Below, piece after piece: positions 1,448 to 60,316 of a stretch of DNA of 64,000 nucleotides (the stretch's first letter is position 1; the number at the start of each line of letters is the position of its first letter). The notes under the pieces are model-generated. The model saw nothing but the letters and a program-made list of their open reading frames with translations. It had not been told where the DNA came from and did not search any database. This DNA comes from Mizuhopecten yessoensis (taxonomy: Eukaryota): NCBI RefSeq assembly GCF_002113885.1, contig NW_018406103.1, positions 37,865 to 101,864 of the forward strand. The letters are read 5' to 3'. Position numbers and translations under genes: made by a program.

Positions 1448-4283
1448 CTTTGGCTTCAGTTACATTGCTCACAAACAGACTCGCAAGTAGCTTTGCTCTT
1501 GTTGTAAATATCTCCTTCTGAAGTGTAAGCCCGATATTTTCATAGCCTGGCTCTGCTTCTAGTACTTCGCCGCTTAGGCACGAAGCTAATTTCACAACCA
1601 CTTCTTTCACCGTTTGAAGGTTGTACTTTTCGATCCAGAGTAGGTATGTGACAATTCGAGATGGGGGTATGTATATATCTACCTCGGAGACAGACTCCAT
1701 GCGTTGTCGGATGACTTCTACAAATTCTGTGATCATTTTTTCTGACCGATATTCATCTGCTAAGGGAAGCACTGTATCGAGTGTTTTATCTGTGAATACG
1801 AAAGAATGCATTTGCATATTTCATGTGTGTAACATGTAGAGAGAAATAACATTCTAAACGGTAACGACAAAATCCATTTTATGATTTCCTTTCCCCCCAG
1901 TTATGGGTGTTCGTTTAATAAGGAGCCCCGTACCACTGCCAAACACTGTAAATAAGTTTTTGAAAATGTTTTTTTTCGAGCATGACTAGAGATTTGAAAA
2001 ATCATTTCCGAAAAAAAAGTATACCTCGTGGAACTTTAATGAGTAATAAGAGATGAATAAACAAAATATCAATAATTCAACAACAGTTGAATGAGTGTAA
2101 AACGATAAGAGGAGTTTGACTGGGATTCGAACCCTGGACTTCAGATTCCTATACAATCGCTTGAACTAAAAATGTCCATGGTCAATTAAACTGTGCTTCA
2201 GTTATGTCTTAACGAAAGTTAAGGGGAGGTAACTGTATATAAGGGAAAATACTGCAGTGAGACAGGGATCCTTAAGTACAGACATCTTCGCCTGGCAAGT
2301 ATATATGAAAAATATGATATATTCTTTCCTTCACTACTATTCTGACAAAGTGTAACACTCGGAAACCCGAATGCAGGAGATTAGTTTCGATTCGGTTTGA
2401 ATCTGACAAATATCAAATATACGCATGATTACGTAAACAGCGTGATTAAGTATCCTTTAATATCAGTGCATGTAATAGTTTTCTCTCGTGTAGATGATTT
2501 TTAGTAGCAAAATGAGACCAAACTGTTGATCCAGCTAGCTGCAGATCCGCTGGGTCTTCTGAAAGAACTTGACCTGAATTTAATCTATTTCTGTTAACCA
2601 ATCAGATATATGTATGCTTCATAATTACCTGTAACATTGTCAGCAAAATTGGGAAGAAGACATTTTAGGAATGTGACCATATCATCATATGTTTTCCCAG
2701 GGAATTTCAGCTCCCTTTTCGTGTCGTCAGTGCATTCGTCTTTTTGACACTCTTTCTTAAGCCAAGCCTCAAAAATAGGTGAAGCAGATTCCAGTAAAGT
2801 TTTGTTTACATGAAGATGTTCATCCTCAATTACAAGAACCACATTGTTTGGCAGGATGCCTGGATCAATCTAAGCAAGAAAGGGTTTACAAGAAATATTA
2901 CTTGACACATCAAAAGAGCCGTCTTGCATTGAATAATATTGAAAGCTTTGAGCAATTATTCTGGCAACCCATTGCATATATGCCTTCTTCCGATTGTTTA
3001 TATTGAAGGGCTATTTTTCAGGGTTATTGACTATAAAATGAGAATATACGTATACTTCAGCAGTTGCGCCTCTTTAACCAAAGCCACTAGGTTATAGAGC
3101 AATGATTTGCAGAATCTTACAAAGAACAAGTAACAAGTTATATGATTGCTGTGTTATGGAATGTTTTAACATCGATATGATCTGAAAAGATCTTATATTG
3201 ATTTGGTTTTGTATATGTTTATTACATTATGACACAAAACAATCAATACTCAATACAGTATATGTATTAATTGTATAACGTCATAATGTTGTAACCGAAA
3301 CATTTAAATCAATTGCCTGAAGATGGCAGTTTGACTTCAAAACGTTATTTACCGTGTTGATGTTCAATTTGTATGTCTACAGATATATAAATAAATATAT
3401 CTTTCAAACCAGTGAAATGTCACCATTTTCCCAATATGATATCGATTGATTAAATGATATGTTTAAGCGTCCTGTTACTTTGGGTTCACGTTTTATTCCT
3501 CACCTTCCTGTGCTGCTTTGGAGAAAGTGGTACATCATCTTTATCGTTATTCGACTCCTCGTCTGATTTCTCGTCATGATCACATGGGGCATTGAGGTTT
3601 GGAATTATAACATCGTCTTCCTGAAGTCTGTAGTGATTATAAAAGTTATCAGTTTTCCTGTTTTTCCCACTTAGACACAAGCCAAGTCTGACAGTATTTC
3701 TATGATTGCAACCTGAATTGAGACAATTCCTTGCGGCAATGTAAATCCACATATACATTCACTTTCGATTTGTCACTTACATTCCTAGTATGATGGTAGC
3801 CGATATGATAACACAACACATCATAAAAAATAAAGTTATATTCAAAACTGAAACCTTATTTCGCACGGAGAATGTATTTATCTTTCTTTGTGTCACAACA
3901 AATATTTAATAACCGGCTGCTAAATCGAAATATATTTTAGCTTAACAGATCCCATTCGGTTTTTATATACACCAAAATGATTAGATAGTTACTTAGTATT
4001 TTATTTTTTTTAGGCATTTTTGCTATTAGATCGACGAACGATGCTTAGTACCCTGGACGATTTTGCATTAAACTTTTAAGTTCAATTTGTCAAACCTTTG
4101 GCACAACAATGCTTTATTTCAATCAAAACTTAGACCATAGCACTGTTTGGATACCAAAAAGCATCCATTTTTTCAACGGAAGACTATCGGATGCTCACGT
4201 TTTCAATGAATGATTTAATGAAATTGGTGCTTAGATTCTGCTATGTCTGTGACAGAATCCATTTAAGCGCTACTCCAATACCG

Positions 4284-4324
<41 letters not shown>

Positions 4325-7792: not shown

Positions 7793-7860
7793 TGTGGTGT
7801 CGTTTTGTTGTCAACAAGGAACATGTGACCTTGCTATACACATGCGTAGTATAAGGAATT
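7782..7860 (-). promoter_or_regulatory. Distal promoter/first micro-exon module of paralog 1 (ATGGC|gtaagt)
   Basis: ATGGC plus a canonical donor, with upstream E-box GTCACATG and an NRF1-like CGCATGTG. Confidence 0.6.
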
Positions 7861-10775: not shown

Positions 10776-11059
10776 ATTAAATAAGATATTCCAAATGACT
10801 ATCATCATGCAATTATTTAAGTCCCGTCATATCAAATCAGATCATTACACATTGCTGATAAGAGCCGAATATAAAATGGCGGAGAGTTGGAAAATATAGA
10901 GTTGTTGTGCTATCACTTAGCCTCATCAATACCATCTATGTAAGTAATACTTAATCACTATCACTATCAGAGATGACCCCGTAATCACCTGTATGTGCGT
11001 TACTTTCAGAAAGGCTAAAATAATCAGGTCAAGGACAGTTGACAGATTACCAGCCTTAA

Positions 11060-11280
11060 ATTGATTGTTTGGGTTGAATGTACTATCAACAGCTAAGGTC
11101 ATTTAAGGATGTGCCTCAATGTGTGTTATGTGAGCGTGCATGTTGGTATGTGTGCTAAAGGGAAAGTATGTGGGTATACGTGCCACCTTGTGATAGCGCA
11201 GATCTGATTCCGACTATGTAGTGCTATCTCACTGAAATACCAAGCCGAAGGCACTCAGCACAGCATTCCGCTCGGCCTTG
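11060..11280 (-). mobile_element. SINE fragment (paralogous copy at ~61185-61410)
   Basis: ttgtttgggttgaatgt..caacagctaaggtcatttaagga and tagtgctatctcactgaaat resemble mollusc SINE 3' regions. Confidence 0.5.
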
Positions 11281-17797: not shown

Positions 17798-18670
17798 GAG
17801 AGGCGTGCACCATATAAATGCTAAGTATAAGACACGTGTTTCTTACATATCAAGAGTCGGGAGAAACACTTCGTTTATAGTTACAATCAAACAAACAGAC
17901 CAACGCATCATGATATAGTCACTTCATCATAAGACGTAAATGTTTTATGATTTGAGTACCTGATGCGAATATTTTATATGTATACAGTCTGTATACAAAT
18001 GTTTAAATTCACGATTTAAAGCAAATTCCAAGCAAGTGTCGTTCTTTACTAGCACGTGCATTATCAGTTATGTTTCGAATAATGTACTGATCAAAGATTA
18101 TTGGAAATATCCACCGTAAGTATGCAGTTACTTTAATAGTTACAAGCTTTGCTTTAGATTTACGAGAGTTTGAATTTATCACGTAAATATTTACATGCGT
18201 CATTAGCACCAATCGATGGTTTGTACTGCGACTTGTACGCAATCGAGGAAAAGTCAATACGTTCCAAATATTCATGCGCTGGGACGCTCCACCGTTTACT
18301 TGAAAAAGCATTGTCTGGTAGTGTTGATAATGCTAGATAGACTTTCACAATTTCTACTACATTTCTTTTCCATGCAGTCATATAGCACGTAGAGAGAGGG
18401 ATTTGGAATTCTTTCATTTTTCCTGCAATAGCAAAAACAACCACAAAATAACTTACTAAATATAATTGAAAGGAAATACAATCAACATGAAAATATAAAG
18501 GGTAATTCAAACAACATCATACCTTGATTTAACAATGAACATCTTAACTAGTACTTTCTTAACGCAAAAAGGTACATTCATTGGTGCATTTGTCGCTAAC
18601 ATTACCGTGCCGCAAAGTAATAAAGTTCATAAACTTATAAGAATATAGGTATGCAAATATTAAACTTCCA

Positions 18671-19450: not shown

Positions 19451-22400
19451 ATAAATGAAGTAGTATTAACAAATAAAAACGTGTGATAGCATGCCAGGAT
19501 GTGACAAGAAATATCGTCCTTATAAAAATGCCCATTGGAGTATGTGTGACATTATACACACTAAATCTTTATGGCAAGTAAGAAAACAAAATGTATTTCC
19601 TTTTTGTTTTATAACTTTGAAATAAGTGTGGTACATGTAGGAACGGGAAAAGTAATACAAATATTGCTGTTAGACAAATAGGAACTGCCGGTTTTAACAA
19701 GCTGTTATCCAGCTGATAAGAGCGAGGGTTAGCGGCCCTGGATCTTTAATGGTCACATAGTATTACGACTTAAGATTTTTTTTTTTTTTTTATCATGACA
19801 GAAATTAAGATTTCATAAACTGACACATACCGAGCTGAAAAATTTACTGACGAGCAGAAACTATCTATCCAGTGCACCCCAATACTTCAAACAGATCCTA
19901 AAAGATCTTTGTCTAAATGCAGGAAAAACAAAAGAGAATCCTACTGAATCTCGGTCTGGGCTTTATGTAATTTTACACTAAGAATACTGTTGCTAATTTC
20001 TATTTTGTTATCTTTTCTTTAAGAACACAATCAAAATGGAATGGGGATTGTCTGGAAGCTTTTTACTGATTCAGATAAAATTAGTGTAAAATTTTGCCTA
20101 ATCACGTTTGTCGTAAATTTTTAAAGTTATGTTTTAGGTAAAACTATCATGATAAATAATTTCAAACTTGTTATCCCTTTTTTGCGTTTGCCTAGTGAAA
20201 TATTATCCATCAAATTAAACTGGATATATAGGCTTACTTTCAGCTTCTATTACACTGGACACCATTAGACTCTCAAGTAGCTTGGCTCTGGCATTAGATA
20301 TATCCCGTTGAAGTCTTTTGCTGATATTTATGTAATCTGGAACTGCCTCAACCTCTTCAGTTGTTAGGAAAGAAGCTAATCTCACAACACATTTTTCAAC
20401 CGTGTTGAGATTATATTGTTCGATCCAGCGTAGGTATGTGACGACCTGTGATGGTGGTATATATATATCCCTCTCGGAGACAGACCCCACGTGCTTCCGG
20501 ATGACTTCTTCACATTCTTTGAGCAAGTTTTCTGTCCGATATTCATCTGCTAATGGGAGTACAGTTTCCAGTGTTGCAACTATGAATACACAAGATTTAG
20601 CGACAATGATTAGTTTTTTTTTTACTTCGGAAGTCGATGCAATTTGAAGTAGGTTTGGAGCATTTTCCAATAATCCTAGAATGTAACAGCTAGATATTTC
20701 TCAATCAAGAGTACGTTGTTCAGAATTGTTTAACCGCACGCTTACTGCATTAAATAATTTTGATCATTATTTTAACGATAACATCTAAACACTGAGTGAA
20801 CATGCTTTTCCTTCTGCAGAGAGTATGCCCTGTCAATGGAAGGAGTGGGTATGAAAACCAAAACGTTCCTATGCAATCAATGTACTATTGTCACTCTTTT
20901 AAATTTAATGCCATAAATGAGAAACGTTGGCCACTTCCTTTTGAAGTTGATGGCTAATTTTCATTAAATTACGTAAAACTTACCATAACTTAAGACAATT
21001 TCATAGGCCTTCCTTTACTTTTCTTTAAACATGTCTTCTTGAGTTGGGAGGCATATCATTTAAGTATAAAAAAGCCATACGTGCTTTCATATTTAGAGCT
21101 TTACATACTAAATATATGGCAATTATTACACTATGCTCGCCAAGTTTTAAGGTTGATACTTTTTAGTTGTGAAAGAAACAAACATTACTCTCATACGAAA
21201 GAAATATAGATACTCTATTTTAATTGATAAATCATACATCATTACTGCTTTAAGATTACCTAGTAGTTTGTCTTTAAAAAACATGTTCAGCCATATTTGC
21301 AACATTTTAACATGCAGATAGAGTGGCGAAAACAATGTTTCATCGTCATAATGGAAAGTGTTTCATGATGCAAACCATATTCGTGAGAGAATCTTAAGAT
21401 CATAAAATACATTTAACCTCCAAATGGCAGTGTAAACATGATGTCCATTTTGTCCCAAAAACCTTAAAAGGACACTATTGTGATTTGGTATAAGCTCGTT
21501 AAAAAGTTTAATAAAAAAACAGCACAATTACGGGTCTATCTATTATTTTACAAGCTGAAACTAGTAAATGTTCCACCATTTTGGGGCTTTTGCAAATGCT
21601 GAATGCTAATACCAAAATCAACAATGTTTAACCCTCATTTAAAGTATTGTTCCATACACATTATTCATAACTTAGAGTTATTCCTGGTGTGCTCAAAATT
21701 CATATTTATCTTGCAGAGAGTCTGATTATCAAAGTATTTCACTTCAAACGCTAAAATATGTATATATTTATAAATATTTGAGTTATATTTGTTTTAATCA
21801 TGTTTTAAGCCACGATTTCATTCCATACGTTTTAAAAAGTTCAAAATGCGTAAAAAATAATTTATTGTTCATATGGTAATACCTGGTTAATTTTGTTAAG
21901 TCGTGTTATTACTAAATGAGTATGTTTAAGGTCATATATTCATCATCGTGTTCCATAATTACTTGTAACGTGGTCAGCGAAAATGGGCAGAAGACATTTT
22001 AGGAATGTGGCCATGTCATCATATGTTTTCCCAGGGAACTTCAGCTCCCTTTTTGTGTCGTCAGTGCACTCGTCTTGTTGCCATTCTTTCTTTAGCCAAG
22101 CATCAAATACAGGTGAAGCTGTTGAGAGTAAATCTTTATTTACATGAAGGTGTATTTCCTCGACCACCAGTGTTACGTCGTTCAGCAGAAAGCCTGGAAA
22201 AATCTGAGCAAGAAAGTTGAAGGGAACATCAAAGAAACTATTCAAAGAGCAGTATTGTATCACATGATTTAAAAAAAAGTTTGAACCATAGCAAATATTT
22301 TTTTGTCTACCCATGGAGAGACTCTTGAATGATTTAAAGGTTATTCCTTCCATTTGACTATTTCCTCATGGTTTTTTTTCTTCAATACACTTTGTTTAAA

Positions 22401-22735: not shown

Positions 22736-25700
22736 TTTTTCCTCTCTTTTTTAAGCGATCGTCTACTTACAACACATGCTTAGTCAATTGTACCTTAATT
22801 GCTGTCTCTCTGTGTCTGTCTTTTCCCCATGTCTCTGTCTCTCTCGTTTTTTCCTCTCTTTTTTAAGCGATCGTCTACTTACAACACATGCTTAGTCAGT
22901 TGTACCTTAATATCTGGCTTTGCAACTGGTTTGATGTCATCTTTAGACTCGATTTCATCTTTAGACTCGATTTCATCTTCAGATTCGTCAGAGTAGCTGT
23001 CCGACTCACCATCATCCACACGTTTGCTAGGAAATCGAGCAGAATGAAAATGGAATTAAAATTGCACGATTTAAAATATAATACAACTTACTACATGCAT
23101 CGGTTATAGTTCAGCACTATATATTTTTACCTTCAAGCAGAACAAAAGGTAACAATGTCAGTGCACCATATGTCCATTTTGCCATAAAGGACTAAAATCA
23201 GATGAGGCAGAAGGCGGTTACACTTCTGGAACACCTGGTTATATTCTTCTTGTTCTTCATCAACGGTCTCAATGTAAATCCTTACTTTGGTCATATTTTA
23301 CCCTACTTTTAACGATCTTGAGATTTAATTAAGGTTTTGCTAGCATTTCAGTATTTTCCTATATTTGTTTTGAAACATGAATGTACGTAGAAAATGAAAA
23401 AAGGAGGGTGAACCTGCCAAAAATATCCTTACAAACCAGTTGCAAATTGACATTGCTTATTGACTGCTGCAGATAACTTATTCGCGTAGGAGTATTGTAT
23501 GTTTTCCGTGCAAAAAATGATATCCTGCTACAATATTATTGAAACCTCGGGGACTTACAGTTCACCAAGCAGAGGCAAGCCCGTTGTGAATTAAATAAGT
23601 ACTAGTAAGACCTTTTGAAACATGGAATACCTCGATGCTGAAAACCAAACAAATATATGACCAAGAAATGTGTAGAAAAAGAATAATAATAGGAAATCGT
23701 CTTCTACTTCATCGATGATACCCGCCGTGTTGCCAACTAATAATGTTCCATAGGTTGACCTCATTATGAAAGATATACAGTTAAGAACACACAAAATGAG
23801 TTATGTAAATATTAAAAGACCTAGTAAATATATTCTGAACTAGGTACATGTACCTCCAAACTACATGGATAATTTCAGTGATCTATATGGCATGGTTTTA
23901 TTTTTACAATATTATTCCAATATACGTTAACTTGTTCTTTCACTTTCGGTTTGTTTCCCACCTTCCCTGTATCATGATAATCGCTATGTCGACAAAATAA
24001 GATAAATCGCATTCAGGGCTTATTTCTGAAATTATGTTTAGAGAATAGATCTTTTAAAACACAAAATAATTTAAATACATCAGGTCAGTATAAAATCATA
24101 TTTTACATAATATGTGCATAGTAAAACCTTATCAAATCAAAATCGAGTCTCTGATATTTAAGCAATGAATGTTTATCGAATGTTGTTATGGTCCTATAAC
24201 ACTAATTACTATTAGGGCTTTATTTATGTAAGTTTGTCAGCAATAGAAATGTTGGTTATAGAACCATAACAATATTTGCTAAAGTATTCATTATGTTCAC
24301 ATTTTCAGATAGTAGTTATGCTTTATTTAGTTATTTCGTACAGTTCTTTGAACAGCAAATAAAGTTTTGACAGCAAAATATTGATGACGTCACAATAGAG
24401 TTTGAAGACGTTGCAATAGCAAATGATGCTATAGTCTCACAACATTTGCCTTCGCAATGCATTGCAATGGAAGGATGCAGAGCAAACATAAACATATTCA
24501 TACATAAACGAGTTACCTCTCTTTGCATTGATTTTAGATTTGTATGCTAGTCATGCCTGTCTATTGTCAATTTCATCCCTATTTTGAAATATTGACCAAT
24601 CAGAATACAGGACAAAACCGTTTTGTTGATGAATCCACCAGTTTGTCATGTTGAGTTCATCAACAAATAGCACACTTACAGAAATCCGGTGATGATAACC
24701 TCGCACGAACATTTGCACGGTCCAGCTACGCGCCTGGTGGAATAAACACAGTAAAATACGTGTATCTTAAATGTTTGCAGGTGACCGAACATATACATGT
24801 ATCACCACACAAACATTGTAGATTGAGAGATTCGAAATAACAGCTCGTCAGGAACGAGCACTGCTTCCACGATAAAATGTTCGCGTTATTCTTGTGGACG
24901 AAATACTTCATTACAACATTAGCATTTTTTTCCTTGAATATCAATATGTGATAATTGCTACCAACACTGAAATAGCCTCTTCTCAAACGCGAAATTAATT
25001 ACTTAAATATACAGTTACACTTTGCAGTACGGATGAAGTCGAATTCGGAAACGGTCTACACAAGGTATTTTTATGTTTATGCATTGAAAGAGTGTTTTCC
25101 ACGTCTATAACATTTATGCCAGCATATCGTTATCTTTCAGGCAATATATAGCGTCACCAAATAAGGATTTATTTTGATAAACATTATAACTTCGTAATTC
25201 TGATAAGAATAAGTCCAGGATTTTCGGATGCTCTATCAACTACACCCGCCATGTAAATGCAGGTAAAATTGAAACTTACATATTTAAATTGAGAACAAGG
25301 GTAAAGAGTGCACTGATAAGCATGATAAAAAACTTCAACCTTAATATCTCAAATAAAATATGGTGTTCTCAACCATAGAATTTGACCATAGTCTTCATCA
25401 AAATACATCATTAAATAAATAATATATGTTCAGAGCAACAGCTTCACTTTTCATTCCTCAAGTTATATCACAGTTTTTATATCGTAATGTTTTCTTTTTT
25501 CAGCAGCAAAAACGATATTCCGAAGTTATTTTGAGAGATTTAAACAACTTTTCCCGACGAAATGTCTCGGTGGGTTCATTGATACAGAATATGAATATTG
25601 CATTACTGCATTATTAATAAGACAAGCAAACAAACCTTTTAACGGGCTTCGGGGAAGGAGTTGACGTTTCTATTTCTGACGTAGCTTTCCTGAAAGATGA

Positions 25701-28700
25701 TGGCAAATCTTAAATCTTACATCATTAAGCGTAGAGTAAGATACAATAAATATTAACATAATATTGAATTTCTGAAATGTCATGATTCGATCTGATGCTT
25801 ATGTATATAAAAAAAAGCTCACCGGACACGGTGTTTGTGATTTGTGATGGTATGATATAATGTTTTTTTCATTATAGTTGATTTATTGTAGATCAAATAA
25901 CTTGATGTCGTAAGACATGCACTTTTACTGCGTGTTTGCATTGTTTAACAGGTCCCTGGTTTGAGGCTCACTTTCACTGTGTGTTTGTATTGTTTAACAG
26001 GTCCCTGGTTTGAGGCTATACTTGCGTTGATATCAGAAGCTTCAACATTATTTCTTATGCCATACCATAGTTTTAATATAAAAAAATAATAATTTGTTAA
26101 CAGTACTTTAAATATATTTCTATTTTTCATCTATTATTATTGAATCAAATTCTACCCGAAGAAATGATTAATTAAAAGACAATTTGCCTAATCATATTTT
26201 GTACCAATACTCATAAACATGCATCGTTGAACAATAAGCAAGTGACTCATGTAAGGACACTTTTTATTGGTTAATACATATTCAGTGCTTGGCAACAGAC
26301 ACGGCGTGCCTGTCGAATTTGTCTCATTGAACCACAAATTATCTTTTACGTCCTCCTGGGCGATTATTTAAACAATAACTTCTGGATCTCTTTGAAGATT
26401 TAAAAAAAAATAACAGTACATGTGTAGACGTTCGACTCTATTAGTTCCCATGTACGTCATCGTAAAATTGTAAAACAGGAGCATTATCTGCAGTGGTTAA
26501 AATATGTTGTGTCAGTTGTGCGGGTCTTGTTGGTGATATAAATATGGGGCATTGTGTGTAAAATATGTACATGGTTAAAAACGAAACATAAAAATTATAT
26601 AAAAGAACTGGATGATGAAGGTCATATGTCCTTGTAAGCACTCATGAGTTAGACACGAAATCACGCTTAATTACATTGTAGCATGATAGAAAAGATAAAA
26701 TCCGTATGTGTTTGTATATATATATAAATAGAAATTTCGAAATTTTGGAAGTGTCAGGACGCAGACTTGGAGATTATTAAACTTTTAAACATATTCTCTC
26801 CCATGGTGTTTATTCACCCACAATATACGTATGTATATTAAACATTTCTTAATGCTAATATCCCATAACTAGTTTAAATTCAATAAGGAAAACAAACCTT
26901 TTCAAAGGCAGCAAGGAAGAAGTTGCCGTTTCATTCCTGAAAATTAATAGAAAGTCTTTTTATATTCTAAAGGCTTAAGTAACATAAACTACATAAGCAT
27001 ATAGGCTATTATATCTGAACTGTAGTGCCCGGGTATTGTGTTTTCGTGTTACACAATTTTGTCATTTTGTAGAACTTTTTCCAATCTGTCGATTATTTTC
27101 AGATTGAACAAGTTAATAAGCCTTCGTACATATATCATATAATTCCATTTTCGTTCCGATTTCCAATAACAGTTTATCTCATATTATGTAGAACGACACG
27201 GAATACAAATTGTAACTTTACAAAATACAAGCGGAGATTTAGTGTAAAGTTTGCAGTTATATTAACAAAGTGATATGGAATAATATTTTTCATCATTTGT
27301 TTTTACATTGCAATATCTACGTAGTGCAAGGATTTACTGAAACTTTCGTTTCAATTTCAATAAAACCTAATTCATGCTATAGGTATGACCGCACCTAATG
27401 TGTGTGTGTTGTTTGTAAGCGCTTTGTCGGTGTGTTTTTGAGATGAGTCCCGATACCGCTAGGTATAATGGTGTGATACCCACACAGAACTCTCGACAAA
27501 AGTACAGGTAAATGTTAGTTTCCGTATAGTAAGCATTAAAATACGACTTCAACACCAATCTCTCGTCATAGTTCAGACGATCACATTGGAGCCTACTGTG
27601 CATATACCTCTACCCCACTTGAATAACTAGTGTCTATCAACGAGTTGTTCATGGTGTAGGGGACATGTTATAATTAGATGGTTTCATATCAACATACATG
27701 GTTAATGTATCTACTTAGCTATAAGACATATACAGAAATTGACACTGATGGCACATGTGGAAAAATTAGTTATGTAGATTTACATATATTGCATACAACC
27801 ATAAGAGTTAAATAGTTGATAAGAGGAACTTGTGACATATTTCAACATACTTACGCCATCGTGTCGTCGATTTCGTTGTCAACAAGGAAGTGGTGGTTAT
27901 GTTATGAACATGCGCAATATACAGAAAGATGTTGTCGTTTTAGCTATAGATATTGGTCATATTTTTGTATATGACTTATACCAATAGCATTGCATTCCAC
28001 CATTGATGTTTAGATTAAGTCTTTTAGCCAACACGGTATTATAGTTTCCAATAACAGTTTATGGCATACTATGTAGAACGACACGGAATACAAAGTGTAA
28101 CTTTACAAAACACAAGCGAATATTTAGCGTAAATATTGCTGTTATGTTGACAAAGTGATATTGAATAATGCTTTTTTTATCATTTGTTTTTTATTGCAAT
28201 ATCTACGTACATGTAGTGTATCGATTTACTGAGGCCAGTTTAATTATTCGTATAATCCGTCGTATATATCACATGTAATTTCACTTTCGTTTCAATTTTA
28301 ATAAAACCTCAAATCATACAATAGGTGTGACCGTACCTAATGTGAGTGTTGATTGTAAGCCCTTTATCGGTGAGTTTTTAAGATTAGTCCCGATACCGCT
28401 AGTTATAATGGTGTGACACCCACACAGAACTCTCGACAAATACAGGCAAATGAACGATACATTGCAGGTTAGTTTCCGCCTAGTAAACATTTAAATACTA
28501 CTTCAACACCAATCTCCCGTCACAGTTCAGACGACCACAATGGAGCCTACTATATAAATACCTCCACCCCACTATAACAATTAGCGTCAACCCCGAGTTA
28601 GACTATCGACGAATCGTTCATGGTGATTAGGGGACATAGTATGATAAGATATGTTTTCATATTAACATGTGAAAGACAGAATTGTAGTTTAAAACACCTG

Positions 28701-37385: not shown

Positions 37386-37399
37386 ATATATTCTCTATA

Positions 37400-38645: not shown

Positions 38646-38699
38646 CGTCTGGTGTTATTCTTCTATATGCATATAATCTGTATAAAAAACTTCATAATT

Positions 38700-38829
38700 T
38701 CAAGTGCATTTACACATCTGAAGCACATGTCGTTCCATTCCATCACGTACATTATCAACATCGTTCGAATAATGTGCTGACCACAGAGTTTTGAATTCTG
38801 ACCTGTTTATCGATAGTGACGTTAATCTA
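38700..38829 (-). CDS. 3' end of exon 5 of a probable additional BTB paralog, truncated by the N at 38830
   Basis: Reads ..SEFKTLWSAHYSNDVDNVRDGMERHVLQMCKCT*, homologous to the ends of paralogs 3 and 4. Confidence 0.6.
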
Positions 38830-38837
38830 NGATTCTT

Positions 38838-41800
38838 CTATATGTATACAACCCGTATCAAAAACTTCATAATTTCAAGTGCATTTGCACATCTGAAGTA
38901 CATGCCGTTCCATGCCATCCCGTACTTTATCACCGTCGGTCGCATAATGTGCTGACCAACGTTTTTAAATTCTGACTTGTTTATCTTTAGTGACGTTAAT
39001 CTGTTTATGCTTTTTGCATAACTTCTTGAGAGTTTCAACCGATCCCAAATAGATATGCATGCAAAGGTAGCAACATGTGCGATCGATGGTATAATTTGCG
39101 GCGTCATGTTGCTAACCACTTGCCCAAAGGGCACCCCAAAAGCCTGAGTAACCACTTGAATGTTTGGTGGGTGAAACATTGACTGGCCTGGAGCCGTATT
39201 TGGTGTTGTTGTTGATGCTATGAGAAACGCCTCCACAATTTCTATTACATTATTTTTCCATTCATCCATATAATGAATGGAGAGTGGAATTTTGAACTGG
39301 TTCATCTTTTCTGTAACAAAAAAATATATTAAAAATAATAAAAAAAGCTAATCAATTATTAAAATAATATTAACATGATAATTCAAACGCCACACCTTAA
39401 TTTAACAAAGAGCATCGATATAAGTACTCTCCAAGAGAAAAAAAGGTAAAGTCATTCGTATTCGTTAACAGGTAAGGAAGCACGGAATACGATCTAAGAA
39501 ACTTGTTAACATGGCAGACATTGGAATCCCATACATACTTATAACTATCAAGAGCACTCATATTCTTCAAATAGATTATTAAGGATACCCGTCCAACTGC
39601 AGGCATGGGGATCCTTGAATAGCAAATAATATAAACTCGCTAAAAAGGGGGTTCAGATGGTCTGGAATGTTACTACTAAGGGAAAGTTTAACGTAAAAGT
39701 TGCCCAATCACGTTTGTTGTAAAATTCGTTTGTGAAGTCACCATTATTGTAGGTGAAAACATGTCACGATATATTATTTCAAACATAATATCCTCTTGTT
39801 TTTTGTCTGGTGAAATGTCTCTATGAAATGAAACTAGATACATAGGCTTACTTTCCGCTTCTGTTACACTGAACACAAATAGACTCTCAAGTAGCTTGGC
39901 TCTGGCATTAGATACATCCAGTTGAAGTCCTGGGCTGACATTTTCGTAGTCTGCATCTGCCTCTAGCTCTTCGGTTTTCAGGTACGATGCTAACCTCACA
40001 ACACATTCTTTACCCGTGTGGAGATTATATCGGTCAATCCAGCGTAGGTATGTGAAGACCCGGGAAGGTGGAATGTATATATCAACCTTGGAGACAGACT
40101 CCACGTGGTTTCGGATGACTTCCACACATTCTGTGATCAAGTTTTCTGTCCGATACTCATCTGCTAAAGGTAGTACTGTATCCAGATTTTTATCTGTAAA
40201 TACACAGGATTTAGAGGGAAGTATGATTTATTTTGTTACTATAAATTCAGATGAAATTTTAAATATGATTCGACGCCATTTTCCTCCACATTTAAACAGA
40301 TAATCCTAATATTTATGTCTTGGACATACTTAAACATTATTTGAAAAGGTGTTTTGACTGAAATGTCACTCCAATGGAAAATATCTATGTCTACTCTAAT
40401 ACCATTAATCATTGAGTGATCCCGCGTTTCTGTCGTGTATAGAGTATATCCTGTACAATGTGAACAATCTCTGCCCTGAGCGCCAAGAACTGCGACACTT
40501 TGAAGAATCATCACCGACCAAAAGTTGTACCCGCAAATGATCCCATAAATTCAGTATTCAATCGATACACTATTATCCATCTTTCATCATCGAATATCAG
40601 GGGGCTACGTTCGATCACTTACGTTCTGTGCGCCCCTTTCATATGCCCTGGCAAAATTTAAGACAAATAATGAGTTATTTGATTGGTCGCAGGAAACAAA
40701 ACTGCCCCATCGCTAGGCTGATACTAGACAGGCGGGATAAACATCCGAGACGTTTTCAAACAATACTGTTTTTTTTTACACAAATATTTGAGACTGCTTG
40801 TGGAAATGATCATACCCAACCGAGACAGACTCAATATTGTGGAAGAATTTTTGTGAAATCTGTACAATTATGAATACTGAACTAGTCCTGTTCTTAGTCT
40901 ATTAAATGTGTCCTAGTAACGGCACGTTTCATCATTACCTGTGATTTTGTCAGGGAAAAAGGGCAGAAGACATTTTAAGAATGTGGCCATCTCATCATAT
41001 GTTTTCCCAGGGAACTCCAGCTTCCTTTTAGTGTCGTCAGTGCACTCGTCTTGTTGCCACTCTTTCTTAAGCCAAGCATCAAAAACAGGTGAAGCTGACT
41101 CTAGTAAGGCTTTGTTTACATGAAGATATTTTTCTTCTACTACCAGTATCACATCGTTTGGCAGAAAGCCTGGATCTATTTGAGCCTAAAATTTGAAAAA
41201 AAGTATTTACGGACATGTTCAAAAAATTCATTCAGTGTACATTACTTTTATTCATTCATTATCAATCCGATTGATACTATATCCAATCAGTTAGTGATTA
41301 TGGGAATTATATAAAGATGTTGAATTCGGAATCTTCATTCCTGAATTCTTAATTTAAAGTAAGGAAATCACCAGATTTTGTTCCTGATGTCAATTACGAA
41401 CGCTTTAGAGGAAAAACTATCCAACATCCTTACATATTACATATGGTGACCCTTCCTAAAGACATGGGCTGGTTTTTATATCTTCTTGTTTATTTAGTAA
41501 CATTGTAAAGTATAATCAGCTGAACTTGTGCATGAATAACATCTTTATAACTTGCAATATATATCAAATTTTCCGAACATAATAGCGATTGATAAAAGCA
41601 TACGTTTTAAGCGTGAGGCTACTTACTACACATGTTTCGTCCTTTACTTCAATATCCAGTATTGGCACTGGTTCGATGTGATCACCAGACTGATCTTTGT
41701 CGTATTCTAAACTTTCATCGCATTGGTTTTGAAGTACGACACCAGGTTCCTGCATTCTATAAAGATTAAAAAAAATGTTTTGAGTTAACGTACATATCAA

Positions 41801-55800: not shown

Positions 55801-58800
55801 TCTGGAATGTTACTACTGAGGGAAAGATTAGTATTAAAGTTGCCTTATCATGTTTGTTGTAAAATTCGTTTGTGAAGTTATAATTATTNAAACTCAATAA
55901 AAGGGGGTTCGCAAAGTCTGGAATGTTACTACTGAAGGAAAGATTAGTATTAAAGTTGCCTTATCATGTTTGTTGTAAAATTCGTTTGTGAAGTTTAATT
56001 ATTGTCATATTTTAGGTGAAAACAGATCACGATATATTTTTTCAAACACATTATCCTCTTGCTTTGTGAATTATTTTCTTTTAAATGAAACTAGATAGAC
56101 AGACTTACTTTCAGCTTCTGTTACACTGCAAACAAATAGACTCTCAAGTAGTTTGGCTCTGGCATTAGATACTTCCAGTTGAAGTCTTAGGCTGACATTT
56201 TCGTAGTCTGCAACTGCCTGTAGCTCTTCGGATTCCAGGTACGAAGCTAACCTCACAACACATTCTTTACCCGTGTGGAGATTATATTGTTCGATCCAGC
56301 GTAGGTATGTGACGACCCGAGAAGGCGGTATGTATATATCCGCCTCGAAGACGGACTCCACGTGCTTTCGGATGACTTCCACACATTCTGTGATCAAGTT
56401 TTCTGTCCGATACTCATCTGCTAAAGGTAGTACTGTGTCCAGCTTTTTATCTGTAAATAACCGGATTTAGAGGGAAGTATGATTTATTTTGTAACTATAA
56501 ATCAAGATGATATTTAAATATGGTTCTACGCCATCTTCCTCCACATTTAAACAGACAATCCTAATATTTATGTCTCGGACATAATTTTATATTATTTGAA
56601 AAGGTGTTTCGACCGAAATGTCCATTGGAAAACATCTATATCCACTGTAATACCATTAATCATTGAGTGATCCCGCGTTTCCGTCAAGTACAGAGTATTT
56701 ACAACGGGAACAACCTATTCTCTGAGCGCCAAGAACTGCGACACTTTGAAGAATCATCTCCGACCAAAAGTTTTCGTACCCGCAAATGATCCCATACATT
56801 TAGTATGCAATCGATACACTATTATCCCTCTTTCATCATCGATTCCCGGGGGGCTACGTTCGATCACTTACGTTCTCTGAGCCTTTGTTTTTTGTCATAG
56901 CAAAATTTAAGACACACGATTAGTTATTTGATTGGTCGAAGGAACAAAAATTGCCCCATCGCTAGGCTGATACTAGACTAGCGGGATAAACATCCGAGGC
57001 GTATTCAAACAATACAGTGGGTCCTATTCTAAGTCTATTAAATGTGCTTATACTATTATTTATTTTGCAAACTAAAATTGTTACTAAAAAAATGATCATA
57101 GTTACAGCACATATTTATTATTACCTGTAACTTTGTCAGGGAAAAAGGGCAGAAGACATTTTAGGAATGTGGCCATCTCATCATAGGTTTTCCCAGGGAA
57201 CTCCAGCTTCCTTTTAGTGTCGTCAGTGCACTCGTCTTGTTGCCACTCTTTCTTAAGCCAAGCCTCAAAAACAGGTGAAGCTGATTCTAGTAAGGCTTTG
57301 TTTACATGAAGATTTTTTTCTTCGACTACCAGTATTACATCGTTCGGCAGGAAGCCTGGATCTATTTGAGCCTAAAATTTGATGAAGGTTTTTACGGACA
57401 TGTCCAAAGAATTCTTTCAGTGTCAGTTACTATTATTCATTCATTTGTCAAAAGTCTCATAATCAGAGTAATGCTATATTTAATAAGACAATGATTAGGG
57501 AATTATAAGAAAGATGTTGAATTGGGAAGCTTCATCACTGAATTCATAATTTAAAGTACGGAACTCACCAGATTTTGTTCCTGATGTCAATAACGAACAC
57601 TTTAGAGGAATAACTTATACAACATCCCTACATATTATATTTTGTGATCCTTACTATAGACATGGGCTGGTTGTTATATCTTCTTGTTGTTTTAGTAATA
57701 TTATAAAGTATTATCATCTGAACTTGTGAATGAATAACATCCTAATAACTTGCAACATATATCAAAAGTTCCGAACGTTATAGCGATTGATAAAAGCATA
57801 CATCGGCTACTCACAACACACGTTTCGTCCGTTACTTCAATATCCAGTATTGGCACTGGTTTGGTGTGATCACCAGACTGATTTGTGTCGTATTCTAAAC
57901 TTTCATCGCACTGGTTTTGAAGAAGAACACCAGGTTTCTGCATTCTATAAAGATTAAAAAAATGGTTTGCCTTAGCGTACATATCAACTGGTGGAAACAT
58001 AAATGTAAAAAATATAATATAAAAAAATACAATTTTATCATAATTAATTAGTCTTTCAGAGTTAAAATGTTAACACTGTTATTCTTCAAATTGTATAAAA
58101 ATAGATAAAATATCTACAACCCTTAAAACTGAGACATCCACTTTTATAACTAACTAACTAATAAATAAGTAAGGTAAAGATTGGATGCCATTAACGATAG
58201 TAAAAAAATCATTATTTCTTAATCAATTCAAGTTGATTTTTTTAAGAAGACTCCAGTATAGTAAAGTGAACAAAATGAATGTCACGGTTTCATTATCTAG
58301 AAATCTGTTAGGGTTCGTTGGAGTATATATCACCAAAAACATGAAGAAATAGTAGTTTCAAGGAGTGTTAACACAGGGGACAGGGCTAGACTGTATCCCA
58401 TGAGTGAAGGGGAATCCTGTCATGGATGTTGGATTCGGGGCTCTCAAACATTATTCATTTTGGAAAACATAGTTTTGACAAACTGCAACCTTTTTCGGGG
58501 TACCTGCTTTTGTTTAAAGAGCAACGGCCGCCCAAATCTATTTTCACGTAATAATTTGTAACCCAAAAATGTCTCTAACGTGATGATTACATACCACTCT
58601 AAGTGGGGGATCACTCGGCTCGTGTATCGATGAAGATGTTGTAGTGGCTTTTTTATTATTGTTTTTATGTTACTAAACCATATCATGAAAAGGCAATTTT
58701 TCAGATTGTGTACACTTATTCTAATTTTGTTGATTTATTGTAATTAAAAGGTATACTTTCACTTTCGTTTTGGTTTCCTTAAATTGGGCTTAAGGTATAA

Positions 58801-60316
58801 TCGTGCATAACATGTATAAAAAAAACTTTATTTATAGAGTATAAAAGACACGTTTAGCTTAAAAATCCAATCTTCCACGTGGTCCTCTTGCCAGTCAAAT
58901 ACATGTGTAAGTTAAAAGATATACATTATTTATTTACACAATTATTATTTCTAAGATGATATCACAGTTATCTTCATTTACAATATCAAAATACAAAAAG
59001 CTGAAGTAGATGTATGTGTTGTTTGCTAGTCCTTTATTTGGTGAATTTAAAGGGTGACACCCGAAAACGTGAGGTATACAGTTAGGGCACCAACGCTACG
59101 AGTAACAGGTAAACGATCATTACATGTAGGGTCCTTCTCCAGCTAAGTAACCTTTAAAATACTGGTAACAGATCAGACGCCGATATACTGTACGGATATC
59201 ACCACCCCGCTTTAAGTCATTCACCAATTAACGACTCTTGACGGGAGCGACTTGAATTGCAGTAGATACAATAACACGAAATTACGTGTTAAAATAAAGA
59301 TTCGTTATCAACGAGGTCTTGTCCAAACAGGGCAACAACAAAATCACATGTATCTGCAGCCCGTGCAGCCCGTGCATAATTAGATTTTTTTTTCTCCTCC
59401 TAAGGGGTCAATGAAGAAAATGTCCGCTGACTCATTGCCACATTTTTGTTCCAGATTCCTTTTCTTAATTCATGATTCTTTCGTCTCGGCGGTGTCCCCT
59501 TAAGCACTTACCTTTGTATGACTTTAGCTGTTGTGAGAACGTTACGAGCTTTAACCTCAAACAAATCTGCTGATCAAGTGTAAATTAAAGAGGTTGATCA
59601 GTCTTAGTACATAAATCATGCAATTTCACTTTCGTTTAGATTTCCAGGAAACCCTAAATCGGGCTATGTGTATTTGTTGTTTGCAAATCCTTTATTCGGT
59701 GAGTTTAAAGTGTGACACCCGATGCCGCAAGGTATGCAGGTGGGTCACAAACGCTACGAGTAACAGGTAAACGAGCTAAAAAGGGAAACATTAAACTACT
59801 GTTAACAGATCAGACGGCGACATACGGACCTTCCGAACGAATACATAGCTGTCTGCTCACGAACGTCTATCCCAAAAAGACTATCAACGAGTAAGACTTG
59901 ACATGAAGTAGATACATTACGGGGAAATTACGTGTTAAAATAAAGTTTCTTACACAGGCGACAAAAATAAGCCACATATATGTGCAGCTCATACAGTACC
60001 GTTTTATTTTCTTCAGCTTTGTGGTCAGTGAAGAAGAAAAAGTCCTCTATCCCCATTGTAACATTTGTGATCCTGATTTGTATTTTTCACTTCCTTATTC
60101 TTTCGTTTCTATGATCTCCCAATGCACTAGCCTTTGTATGACTTTAACTGTTGTGAGAAAGTTACTAGGTGTTATCCCAAACAAACAAAAATGTACATGG
60201 ACTACATTGTATAACTAAATAGATGGTGATGCAAATACTGCATACAAACACGTATACTATTACGTTAAATAGCAACATAGCTGAACCTCTGTCCTGTTAC
60301 GAAATACTTACGCCAT
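52900..60316 (-). CDS. BTB/POZ gene paralog 4, apparently intact, 381 aa. Exons: 60312-60316, 57815-57944, 57125-57371, 56109-56450, 52900-53321
   Basis: 5+130+247+342+422 = 1146 nt, open, all GT-AG. Reads MAMQKPG..AQIDPGFLPNDVILVVEEKNLHVNKALLESASPVFEAWL..ERHVLQMCKCI*. Confidence 0.88.
53683..55733. mobile_element. ~2-kb insertion in intron 4 of paralog 4 (unclassified; contains a SINE-like piece and a ~155-bp x3 tandem repeat at 55245-55700)
   Basis: Absent from the paralog 3 intron (gtccaactgcaggc at ~39591). Flanked by ccaaatgca / ccaactgca. Confidence 0.6.
58595..58637 (+). pseudogene. Shorter 5.8S rRNA pseudogene fragment, paralogous to 42415-42515
   Basis: actctaagtgggggatcactcggctcgtgtatcgatgaaga, with the same upstream flank (ttcggggtacctgct...). 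Confidence 0.85.
58755..58771 (-). promoter_or_regulatory. IRF-E/ISRE motif in intron 1 of paralog 4
   Basis: actttcactttcgtttt is identical over 17 bp to 4741-4757. Confidence 0.55.
59624..59650 (-). promoter_or_regulatory. ISRE plus consensus GAS (TTCCAGGAA) composite element, intron 1 of paralog 4
   Basis: tttcactttcgttt-aga-t-ttccaggaa. Confidence 0.6.

What the first reader, a model, noticed from the sequence alone, without database searches (positions are those of the whole stretch)
1448..60316. Tandem family of BTB proteins with an unrecognised C-terminal domain: candidate diversifying immune Cullin-3 adaptor array
Seen: four head-to-tail paralogs share one exon/phase architecture (acidic exon 2, BTB, 114-codon helical exon, terminal domain W(K)NNVxEIVExFL...ACxxIxDRxKxS...LWxAHY...ERHVLQMCKC). 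They are in different states: intact, frameshifted, pseudogene, partial. Known: BTB plus BACK-like helices bind Cul3, and birth-and-death adaptor arrays such as nematode MATH-BTB and F-box genes are proposed to target foreign proteins. Inference: this is a lineage-specific equivalent. I recognise no Kelch, MATH or zinc-finger domain in exon 5.
Basis: partly seen in the sequence, partly recalled or inferred. Interest (0 to 1): 0.8.

Follow-up and report, generated by a model that had tools for sequence, protein, structure and literature searches.

The report
Scallop-only SPOP-like BTB gene array
This stretch of the Yesso scallop genome holds four tandem copies (of about fifteen genome-wide) of a scallop-only gene family that joins a SPOP-like ubiquitin-ligase adaptor scaffold to a small helical end piece with no recognisable relatives; the genes are real and one is transcribed, but nothing shows an immune role.

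Summary
Four minus-strand paralogs share the same exon plan and splice phases: a short acidic exon, a 247/241-nt BTB exon, a 342-nt (114-codon) helical exon, and a terminal exon.

- **Copy states:** D (LOC110450888, Mizuhopecten yessoensis) is intact, and RNA-run contigs carry its splice junctions. C has a 1-nt deletion in the terminal exon. B's terminal exon is truncated and decayed. A's terminal exon lies off-window and is frameshifted.
- **Exon 4:** it folds (AF2, pLDDT 85) like SPOP's 3-box/BACK region (Z 9.8).
- **Exon 5:** it adds one helix, a 24-63-residue disordered variable loop and a four-helix bundle. It has no hit in Pfam, PDB sequences, 1.84 billion protein representatives outside scallops, or fold libraries above helical-bundle noise.
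- **Family size:** about 15 loci in two tandem clusters in M. yessoensis, and 2-3 each in Pecten maximus and Argopecten irradians. Thirteen M. yessoensis members form species-only clades.
- **Selection:** pairwise dN/dS is below 1 in every folded part (BTB 0.22, bundle 0.47). The loop diverges through indels, but no faster than the most rearranged non-coding DNA.

Cul3 binding is plausible but untested. The φ position is an invariant Trp, and the Glu of φ-x-E is not conserved. The immune and diversifying reading has no support. The scan also noted this family on another piece (s1-529826).

The parts
57815..57944 (-). Gene D (LOC110450888) exon 2: ATG at 57943, 43 acidic codons (9 D/E against 2 K/R), gtgagt donor after 57815
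   Evidence: the RNA-contig joint 57370->57814 fixes the donor
57125..57371 (-). Gene D exon 3: BTB core, 247 nt, phase 0 in and phase 1 out
   Evidence: Pfam BTB; RNA-contig joints 57370->57814 and 56450->57125, with GT..AG on the minus strand
56109..56450 (-). Gene D exon 4: 342 nt (114 codons) holding the last two BTB helices plus a 3-box/BACK-like helical region
   Evidence: AF2 model residues 1-114 match SPOP 266-367 at Z 9.8-9.9. A 16-letter overhang on an RNA contig at 56109 equals the start of exon 5
52900..53321 (-). Gene D exon 5: a linker helix, a disordered variable loop (P0001 residues 274-306 at pLDDT<50), a four-helix bundle (about 311-377) and the stop codon; the 3' UTR continues below 52900
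   Evidence: no known domain found; covered by RNA-run contigs
41627..41755 (-). Gene C (LOC110450938) acidic exon
   Evidence: 84% identity to D exon 2 by tblastn
40939..41185 (-). Gene C BTB exon
   Evidence: dN/dS against D is 0.09
39852..40193 (-). Gene C helical exon (342 nt)
38875..39310 (-). Gene C terminal exon, with a 1-nt deletion between 38962 and 38961 that shifts the frame inside the bundle
38657..38828 (-). Tandem 175-bp duplicate of the 3' end of C's terminal exon. Its ...LWSAHYSNDVDNVRDGMERHVLQMCKCT* reading is open. It is separated from the first copy by the masked N at 38830
22903..23049 (-). Unit B acidic exon (84-86% identical to the acidic exon of LOC110450887)
21963..22203 (-). 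Unit B BTB exon (open reading; acceptor 6 nt inside the D/C position)
20238..20579 (-). Unit B helical exon (342 nt, open reading)
18160..18422 (-). Unit B terminal exon: the open frame ends after ...DACKYLRDKFKLS*, and the remnant of the bundle downstream carries stops
   Evidence: the same truncated type is seen in P0014 and P0022
3501..3632 (-). Gene A (LOC110450891) acidic exon (12 D/E against 5 K/R)
2629..2869 (-). Gene A BTB exon
1448..1789 (-). Gene A helical exon (342 nt). A's terminal exon lies about 3.2-3.6 kb beyond the window start and is frameshifted
25638..26935 (-). Two short 5' coding exons (26897-26935 and 25638-25694) upstream of unit B. They are 100% identical to residues 3-32 of LOC110450887 isoforms, whose BTB unit lies beyond the window start

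Best explanation
The window covers four of six units of one tandem cluster. A second cluster with at least nine loci lies on another scaffold. Both belong to a Pectinidae-restricted gene family.

Each gene encodes a soluble protein of about 340-410 residues with these parts:
- a short, variable acidic N-terminus;
- a SPOP-like BTB domain;
- a SPOP-like 3-box/short BACK region (exon 4);
- a family-specific C-terminal module (exon 5), made of a linker helix, a disordered S/T/P-rich loop of 24-63 residues, and a compact four-helix bundle ending in ...ERHxLxMCKC.

Shown: the architecture, the fold, the taxonomic restriction, the spliced form of copy D in RNA-run contigs, purifying selection on all folded parts, and the mix of intact and C-terminally broken copies.

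Inferred: by analogy with SPOP, the BTB/3-box part docks onto the Cul3 N-terminus and self-associates. The C-terminal bundle, with its loop or the acidic N-terminus, holds the partner protein to be ubiquitinated. The array grew by recent local and segmental duplication in the Mizuhopecten lineage and loses copies by lesions in exon 5 (birth and death). The loop changes mainly by small indels that re-frame short stretches, as expected for a disordered linker kept open but not kept in sequence.
For: - **Four units, same exon lengths and phases:**
- **Annotation:** D equals XP_021354343.1/OWF50027.1 and is annotated only as 'uncharacterized'/'BTB domain-containing'.
- **RNA evidence:** contigs of two runs from different studies (X4 an RNA library on record; X10 only guessed to be RNA) cover D's exons but hardly its introns. 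They carry both BTB-exon junctions plus the exon 4/5 overhang.
- **BTB:** Pfam BTB E 2e-11 for P0001; 19 of 20 members match.
- **Closest solved sequence:** the SPOP BTB, E 2e-4.
- **Fold:** the AF2 model of exons 4+5 has pLDDT 84.7 and pTM 0.78, with 13 helices and one disordered loop. Residues 1-114 match SPOP 266-367 at Z 9.8-9.9, rmsd 3.1-3.2 over 95-98 residues. Next come KBTBD4, KBTBD2, KLHL3, KLHL22, gigaxonin and vaccinia A55 BTB-BACK, several of them solved with Cul3.
- **Conserved Cul3-facing segment:** SPVFEAWLKKEWQ aligns to SPOP's Cul3-contacting α3-β4 segment and is the most conserved stretch of the family. An invariant Trp sits at the φ position. PMC3616122 describes the φ-x-E motif.
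- **Taxonomic restriction:** an exhaustive phmmer search of exon 5 found only five real clusters, all scallop. Word and profile searches found 23 proteins, all Pectinidae or unlabelled.
- **Tree:** 13 M. yessoensis members fall in three species-only clades.
- **dN/dS medians:** BTB 0.22, exon 4 0.37, N-helix 0.25, bundle 0.47.
- **Cluster maps:**
Against: - No experiment or complex prediction shows Cul3 binding.
- The Glu of φ-x-E aligns to Q/K/S/T/N/G. The register is uncertain because the family has three extra residues in this loop.
- The Pfam BTB match begins at profile position 12, and the preceding residues (IDPGFLP) look non-helical. The BTB dimer interface may therefore differ from SPOP's (partly from memory of the SPOP structure).
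- The bundle was folded only together with exon 4, from 20 closely related sequences. A single-sequence fold of exon 5 alone failed (pLDDT 37).
- Two raw-read RNA runs showed almost no reads on D, so expression is low or tissue-restricted.
- Half of the units in this cluster have a damaged exon 5. The C-terminal module may therefore be dispensable, or the family may be decaying.
Confidence: 0.6

Rival explanations
1. One reading: a diversifying intracellular immune repertoire. Each paralog would be a Cul3 adaptor whose hypervariable loop and bundle recognise a different foreign (viral or parasite) protein, as proposed for nematode MATH-BTB and F-box arrays.
For: - Lineage-specific expansion with copy turnover in TE-rich tandem arrays.
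- The C-terminal bundle evolves fastest among the folded parts (dN 0.35-0.6 against about 0.1 for BTB), and 2 of 15 pairs have dN/dS above 1.
- The loop is unalignable among the three closest paralogs although its flanks are 85-90% identical, and the frame stays open.
- PMC4334554 summarises the nematode precedent: selection on substrate-binding domains but not on cullin-binding domains.
Against: - No expression, induction or interaction data link the genes to infection.
- Median dN/dS is below 1 in every folded region.
- The loop is predicted disordered. Its divergence equals that of the lowest roughly 10% of non-coding windows between the same two copies, so relaxed constraint with indels suffices to explain it.
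- Within the A-type subfamily the loop is moderately conserved (S.WP.T.AY).
- There are only about 15 genes, far fewer than in nematode or plant adaptor repertoires.
Confidence: 0.15
2. These are not Cul3 adaptors. They would be BTB/BACK oligomerisation proteins that act as scaffolds, or as modulators or decoys of genuine SPOP-type ligases. Lacking a MATH domain, they could co-assemble through BTB/BACK and tune or block ligase assemblies. The truncated copies (A, B, C types) would act the same way.
For: - There is no MATH, Kelch or other known substrate domain.
- The Glu of φ-x-E is not conserved.
- SPOP's BACK mediates higher-order assembly (PMC3616122 mentions BACK-mediated higher-order structures of SPOP).
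- Three units keep open BTB and BACK exons under dN/dS 0.1-0.5 although exon 5 is broken.
- The best structural neighbours of the bundle include dimerising four-helix bundles such as the KaiA C-terminal domain (Z 7.2).
Against: - The Cul3-facing α3-β4 segment is the best-conserved stretch of the family.
- Identity to SPOP is only 18-19% over exon 4, so hetero-assembly with SPOP is doubtful.
- The bundle is under purifying selection in the intact copies.
Confidence: 0.2
3. A largely decaying, functionally marginal young gene family. Duplication in a repeat-rich region would have produced copies that are being lost, and exon 5 would be a lineage-specific extension of no particular function.
For: - Three of six units in this cluster have a damaged exon 5.
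- Crypton, Tc1/mariner remnants and minisatellites are interleaved with the units.
- RNA depth is low in two raw-read runs.
- Several annotated models in cluster 2 are truncated.
Against: - dN/dS is 0.2-0.5 across all folded parts, including the bundle, among at least six intact terminal exons.
- The family, bundle included, is retained in three scallop genera.
- Spliced mRNA of D is present in RNA-run contigs, and 14 runs from 9 studies held about the exonic share of the sampled words.
Confidence: 0.05

Closest known systems
SPOP / MATH-BTB (TD-POZ, BATH, plant BPM) Cul3 substrate adaptors
   Same: SPOP's BTB domain is the closest solved sequence (E 2e-4). Exon 4 superposes on SPOP residues 266-367, which cover the end of the BTB, the 3-box and the short BACK (Z 9.8-9.9). 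One paralog is auto-named 'BTB and MATH domain-containing protein 38-like'. Like nematode BATH genes, the family sits in tandem arrays with copy turnover.
   Different: There is no MATH domain anywhere, and the N-terminus is a short acidic stretch of about 43-74 residues. About 140 extra C-terminal residues (helix, disordered loop, four-helix bundle) have no counterpart in SPOP. Identity to SPOP is only 18-19%. The Glu of φ-x-E is not conserved.
BTB-BACK-Kelch (KLHL/KBTBD) adaptors
   Same: A BTB followed by helical hairpins. KBTBD4, KBTBD2, KLHL3, KLHL22 and gigaxonin align to model residues 1 to about 105-134 at Z 5-8.
   Different: There is no Kelch propeller. The alignments stop before the terminal bundle. 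Pfam BACK is not matched (one member at E 0.13).
Nematode F-box and MATH-BTB birth-and-death adaptor arrays
   Same: Lineage-specific tandem expansion; a conserved cullin-side domain with a faster-evolving other end; pseudogenised copies (PMC4334554 for the nematode case).
   Different: The family is tens of times smaller. No region-wide dN/dS above 1 was found here. The fast part is a disordered loop rather than a folded binding surface.
Generic up-down four-helix bundles (KaiA C-terminal domain, oomycete RXLR WY domain, a mitoribosomal protein)
   Same: Model residues 183-255 superpose at Z 6-8, rmsd 2.3-3.8 over 62-76 residues.
   Different: Z lies below the level at which helical bundles are informative, according to the tool's own note. 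Identity is 4-14%, and nothing suggests shared ancestry or function.

Membership tests
BTB/POZ domain proteins (Pfam PF00651) | Significant match to the BTB profile above the gathering score | tested here: met
   P0001 scores 44.4 bits (cut-off 20.5), residues 54-154 against profile positions 12-108. 19 of 20 family members match. The BTB exon of unit B alone scores 29.3 bits.
Cul3 substrate adaptors of the BTB/3-box type | A pair of helices (3-box, the first BACK hairpin) directly after the BTB domain | tested here: met
   AF2 model helices 44-57 and 60-71 follow the BTB helices. The model superposes on SPOP BTB/3-box (3htm Z 5.9; full-length SPOP Z 9.8), KLHL3-Cul3 (4hxi Z 6.3) and KLHL11-Cul3 (4ap2 Z 4.7).
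Cul3 substrate adaptors of the BTB/3-box type | The φ-x-E motif in the α3-β4 loop (KLHL3 M83-S84-E85, PMC3616122) | tested here: inconclusive
   In the HMMER alignment to SPOP, the segment FEHEMEE aligns to LKKEWQ(Q/K). The φ position is an invariant Trp (W86 of P0001). The Glu position is Q/K/S/T/N/G, with D/E one or two residues later, and the family has a 3-residue insertion there. Taking 'MEE' (M233-E235) as SPOP's motif rests on my own counting and memory.
Cul3 substrate adaptors of the BTB/3-box type | Physical binding to the Cul3 N-terminal domain | not testable with these tools
   No complex prediction or experiment was available.
SPOP / MATH-BTB family | A MATH (TRAF-like) substrate-binding domain N-terminal to the BTB | tested here: not met
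   No MATH hit in any of 20 members at E<=1. The N-terminus is only 43-74 acidic residues.
SPOP / MATH-BTB family | SPOP-type short BACK after the 3-box | tested here: met
   The SPOP C-terminal domain 4hs2 (296-359) aligns to model residues 31-102 at Z 5.2, and full-length SPOP aligns through residue 367 at Z 9.8. There is no sequence-level Pfam BACK or BACK_BPM_SPOP hit.
BTB-BACK-Kelch (KLHL) | C-terminal Kelch β-propeller | tested here: not met
   No Kelch hit. The model of exon 5 is all-helical.
Diversifying (positively selected) adaptor repertoires | dN/dS above 1 in the substrate-binding part but not in the cullin-binding part | tested here: not met
   Pairwise NG86 medians are BTB 0.22, exon 4 0.37, N-helix 0.25 and bundle 0.47, with only 2 of 15 bundle pairs slightly above 1. 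Site-level tests were not run, and the loop cannot be aligned.

The most novel reading that the evidence does not exclude
Scallops may have evolved their own class of Cul3 adaptors. In it, an orphan four-helix bundle carrying an indel-driven, frame-shuffling hypervariable loop replaces MATH or Kelch as the recognition module. The tandem arrays would then be a germline-encoded, rapidly turning-over repertoire for recognising foreign or selfish proteins.
Probability: 0.1. Interest if true: 0.75.

Novelty: new variant of a known kind. Interest (0 to 1): 0.42.

Why it matters
BTB adaptors are modular: a cullin-side scaffold joined to a substrate-side domain such as MATH, Kelch, a zinc finger or PHR. 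This family shows a scaffold of clear SPOP type joined to a C-terminal module that has no detectable relatives outside one bivalve family. It has recently expanded about five-fold in one genus.

If the module binds substrates, it would be a new recognition domain for Cul3 ligases. It would also be a compact case for studying how new adaptor specificities arise, and how disordered loops diversify by compensated indels.

If it does not, the family is one more ordinary lineage-specific expansion of the kind bivalve genomes hold in large numbers. The genes are currently annotated only as 'uncharacterized', and I found no paper that mentions them.

Tried and rejected
**Searches with exon 5 alone that found nothing**
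- Pfam and NCBIfam.
- Word-index protein search.
- PDB sequence search with the single sequence and with a 13-sequence profile. The best was E 0.24-0.83, on unrelated chains.
- ESM-Atlas features on the whole exon.
- A single-sequence AF2 fold, which was useless (pLDDT 37.5).

**Fold and profile searches**
- Foldseek against PDB gave no match at E<=1e-3.
- The Atlas shape search gave TM<=0.41, to generic helical repeats.
- Atlas features for residues 300-379 gave scores of 0.87-0.91 to small clusters. Some are labelled BACK, BACK_BPM_SPOP or BTB. I keep this only as a lead that the bundle might be a very diverged BACK-type repeat.
- hhalign of the terminal module against exon 4 found no internal repeat (probability 0.3%). 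An origin by duplication of the BACK hairpins is therefore not supported.

**Look-ups and literature**
- Exact-protein look-ups failed for three GenBank or short-isoform models. They succeeded with the longest isoforms.
- Literature searches for the LOC identifiers and for BTB/scallop/expansion found nothing relevant.

**Ideas considered and rejected**
- One gene with alternative BTB units. Each unit has its own full exon set. Against this, the LOC110450887 model does splice from 5' exons upstream of unit B across B and A.
- A zinc site in ...H..L.MC.C. These residues are not invariant.
- The two clusters being haplotypes of each other. The nearest pairs are only about 78-85% identical in protein.


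Full report
**Scope and rules followed**

Each exon was searched by reference. The exhaustive search with exon 5 returned the annotated protein P0001. It is identical to D's exon 5 over residues 242-379, and its whole sequence equals my exon-by-exon reading of D. From then on I used P0001 by its id. The single masked N letters at 38830, 50017, 55889 and 61940 were left as they are.

Yes. Six-frame ORFs and tblastn of the exon peptides against the window show four units, all on the minus strand. They start about 15-19 kb apart.

Reading the DNA and frames gives the same plan in each unit:
- a short acidic coding exon;
- a BTB exon of 247 nt in C and D, and 241 nt in A and B, where the acceptor lies 6 nt further in; the phase is unchanged;
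- a terminal exon.

The splice phases are 0, 1, 1. AG/GT sites sit at the homologous positions.

For D the exons are 57943-57815, 57371-57125, 56450-56109 and 53321-52900. That is 1137 nt, or 379 codons.

- D is intact.
- C has a 1-nt deletion between 38962 and 38961, inside the bundle. It also has a 175-bp tandem duplicate of the exon's 3' end, whose reading is open.
- B's terminal exon ends after the first bundle helix, and the rest is decayed. B's BTB and helical exons are open. Two other loci (P0014, P0022) share this truncated type.
- A's terminal exon is outside the window. On the fetched flank it is split over two frames (L005 42172-42327 and 42386-42571).

**2. What genome and which genes?**

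The exhaustive search and the cluster look-ups identify the genome as Mizuhopecten yessoensis.
- D is LOC110450888 (XP_021354343.1, OWF50027.1, A0A210QMR7), named only 'uncharacterized' or 'BTB domain-containing protein'.
- C is LOC110450938.
- A is LOC110450891.

The fetched flanks map exactly onto the window. L005 position x equals window position 38973-x, and L006 20828-29051 equals window 64000-55777.

The order on scaffold NEDP02002776.1 is: a PX-domain gene, LOC110450890, D, C, unit B, A, then the BTB unit of LOC110450887. That makes six units in this cluster.

The LOC110450887 model starts inside the window at 28972. It uses two small coding exons, 26897-26935 and 25638-25694. It then splices across units B and A to its own unit, which lies beyond the window start.

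A second tandem cluster lies at about 18-135 kb of NEDP02076746.1. It holds at least nine annotated loci.

**3. Is gene D expressed?**

Fourteen runs from nine studies held about 21-46% of the sampled words of the 5.3-kb gene; one is an RNA library on record and the others are only guessed to be RNA. For the eleven runs at 21-25% this is roughly the exonic share.

I laid reads from four runs on D. Contigs of X4 (an RNA library on record) and of X10 (RNA only by guess), from different studies, cover the exons and hardly the introns. They carry these joints:
- 57370->57814 (X10 only) and 56450->57125 (both runs), both GT..AG on the minus strand;
- an overhang in X4 at 56109 that equals the first 16 letters of exon 5.

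All three coding junctions of the model are therefore supported. Two deep raw-read RNA runs showed almost nothing on D, so expression is low or tissue-specific. I could not test units A, B or C.

**4. What are the domains?**

*BTB.* Pfam finds only BTB: P0001 residues 54-154, E 2e-11, and 19 of 20 members match. A family profile searched against PDB sequences finds only the SPOP BTB (E 2e-4).

*Exons 4+5 model.* An AF2 model of exons 4+5 (P0001 125-379, built from a 20-sequence family alignment) is confident: pLDDT 84.7 and pTM 0.78. It has thirteen helices and one disordered stretch, model residues 150-182, which are P0001 274-306.

*Exon 4.* Model residues 1-114 correspond exactly to exon 4. 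They superpose on full-length SPOP residues 266-367 at Z 9.8-9.9, rmsd 3.1-3.2 over 95-98 residues, with 18-19% identity. Behind SPOP come KBTBD4, KBTBD2, KLHL3, KLHL22, gigaxonin BTB/3-box, KLHL11 and vaccinia A55 BTB-BACK, several of them solved in complex with Cul3. Exon 4 therefore holds the last BTB helices, the 3-box and a short SPOP-type BACK.

*Exon 5.* It adds a linker helix (about P0001 255-270), the disordered loop, and a four-helix bundle (about 311-377). The bundle's best structural neighbours are:
- a mitoribosomal protein (Z 8.0);
- the KaiA C-terminal domain (Z 7.2);
- oomycete RXLR WY domains (Z about 6).

All of these lie below the level the tool itself regards as informative for helical bundles. 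Foldseek gave no hit at E<=1e-3, and the Atlas shape search gave TM<=0.41.

A language-model feature search of residues 300-379 gave weak hits (0.87-0.91) to small clusters. Some of these are labelled BACK, BACK_BPM_SPOP or BTB. That is a lead, not evidence. hhalign finds no similarity between the terminal module and exon 4.

One caveat applies. 'No known fold' can therefore only be stated as 'no specific match found'.

**5. Distribution and history**

phmmer of exon 5 against 1.84 billion representatives gave six hits. Five are real, and all five are M. yessoensis or Pecten maximus.

The word and profile searches gave 23 proteins:
- about 17 M. yessoensis entries, corresponding to about 15 loci;
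- 2 from P. maximus;
- 3 from Argopecten irradians;
- 1 unlabelled transcript.

A maximum-likelihood tree (20 rows, midpoint root for drawing only) gives these groupings:
- M. yessoensis LOC110443536 pairs with P. maximus LOC117316064 (support 100/100).
- The other 13 M. yessoensis members fall in three well-supported species-only clades: the D type, the B type and the A type.
- Each of these three clades has members in both genomic clusters.

This pattern fits an expansion in the Mizuhopecten lineage followed by, or interleaved with, duplication of the whole array. Sampling of other scallops is limited to annotated proteomes.

**6. Selection**

I computed pairwise Nei-Gojobori estimates on codon-threaded alignments, using window copies plus paralogs from fetched loci. 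Median dN/dS values were:

| Region | Median dN/dS |
|---|---|
| BTB exon | 0.22 |
| Exon 4 | 0.37 |
| Terminal N-helix | 0.25 |
| Four-helix bundle | 0.47 (range 0.31-1.15; 2 of 15 pairs above 1) |

All folded parts are thus under purifying selection, weakest in the bundle.

The loop behaves differently. Among the three closest paralogs (D, C and LOC110443549) the flanks are 85-90% identical at the DNA level. A stretch of about 100-146 nt between them is only 44-49% identical and differs in length.

A gap-tolerant alignment of the D and C loops still scores above shuffles: 35 against a mean of 3.3, sd 8.8 and maximum 31. It contains many indels that are not multiples of three, so short stretches are read in different frames while the overall frame stays open.

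However, 5 of 56 non-coding 90-nt windows between C and D are equally diverged, against a median of 85%. Within the A-type subfamily the loop is recognisably conserved. The loop therefore evolves like unconstrained, indel-prone DNA whose frame is kept open. That pattern does not require diversifying selection, and it does not exclude it either.

**7. Is there a Cul3 interface?**

PMC3616122 describes four Cul3-contact regions in BTB-BACK adaptors. It also describes the φ-x-E motif in the α3-β4 loop (KLHL3 M83-S84-E85). It notes that the BACK/3-box region contributes to Cul3 binding in KLHL3 and is required for full binding in SPOP.

In the HMMER alignment to SPOP from the SPOP-Cul3 crystal entry 4EOZ, the family's invariant SPVFEAWLKKEWQ aligns to SPVFSAMFEHEMEE. 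The φ position is an invariant Trp, W86 of P0001. The Glu position is variable. Acidic residues follow one or two positions later, next to a 3-residue insertion.

My numbering of SPOP (M233-E234-E235) comes from counting back along the printed alignment and from memory. It agrees with the chain ranges reported by the structural aligner.

The verdict is that Cul3 binding is plausible and not shown. The Pfam match starts at profile position 12, and the residues before it (IDPGFLP) look non-helical. The N-terminal helix that forms much of SPOP's dimer interface may therefore be absent. I could not fold the BTB domain to check this.

**8. Mechanism and rivals**

The best-supported reading (confidence about 0.6) is a scallop-specific SPOP-like BTB/3-box/BACK scaffold that most likely docks on Cul3. 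It has swapped MATH for a C-terminal helical module and evolves by local duplication and loss.

The rivals are:
- non-ligase scaffolds or decoys (0.2);
- a mostly decaying family (0.05).

**9. Novelty**

The genes are in RefSeq as uncharacterised proteins. No paper mentions them. The architecture is a new variant of a known kind: a SPOP-type scaffold joined to an orphan C-terminal module. It is a moderately interesting, lineage-restricted family.

The scan has also noted this family on another piece of the genome (s1-529826), and it has noted the loop on this same stretch (s1-529764).

Noticed in passing
window 34096-36788 (+), flanked by 33142-33965 and 37394-38651: ORF fragments matching QRICH1, DUF3504 and the Phage_integrase C-terminus, i.e. 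a Crypton-type tyrosine-recombinase element. They lie inside a 35-bp minisatellite (23 and 36 copies) just 3' of gene C. The same minisatellite (9 copies) sits 3' of gene D at 52352-52671.
   Followed up: partly
window 25638-26935 (-) and 28972: The RefSeq model of LOC110450887 begins at 28972 and uses two small coding exons upstream of unit B. It then skips units B and A (about 40 kb) to reach its own BTB unit beyond the window start. This read-across transcription in the array may mean that 5' exons are shared or hijacked between units.
   Followed up: partly
window 18671-19451: Three head-to-tail copies of a 260-bp unit at 99-100% identity, in the intron between the helical and terminal exons of unit B. 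This is a very recent tandem triplication.
   Followed up: no
window 693-1046 (+) and about 400-600 (-): An ORF that I read by eye as a remnant of a Tc1/mariner-like transposase C-terminus; Pfam gave no hit for it. It lies downstream of A's helical exon. RefSeq isoform X2 of LOC110450891 ends in a short exon (...AVKFPATTIHDDFTP) read from the opposite (minus) strand a little downstream of it. An isoform of LOC110450890 has the same ending, so this alternative end is duplicated along with the unit.
   Followed up: partly
window 4699-6124, 7054-7999, 44051-45134, 59578-60775: A block of about 1 kb, 67-75% identical between copies, recurs upstream of units A (twice), C and D. It could be a shared promoter or first-exon region, or a repeat family. 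The annotated start of gene D (60316) falls inside it.
   Followed up: no
window 49285-51069: A satellite array with a period of about 145 bp (6-10 copies, 70-77% identity) between genes C and D. Long spurious ORFs run on both strands.
   Followed up: no
window 53685-53861: A segment in D's intron 4 with very high RNA-contig depth (187-414) and many loose ends in all four runs. It is probably a transcribed repeat or TE fragment rather than part of the gene.
   Followed up: no
L004 6112-12055 (NEDP02076746.1): LOC110443536 is the M. yessoensis ortholog of P. maximus LOC117316064. It is annotated without its BTB exon, which is called as a separate 117-residue gene just upstream. This is probably a split gene model.
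   Followed up: no
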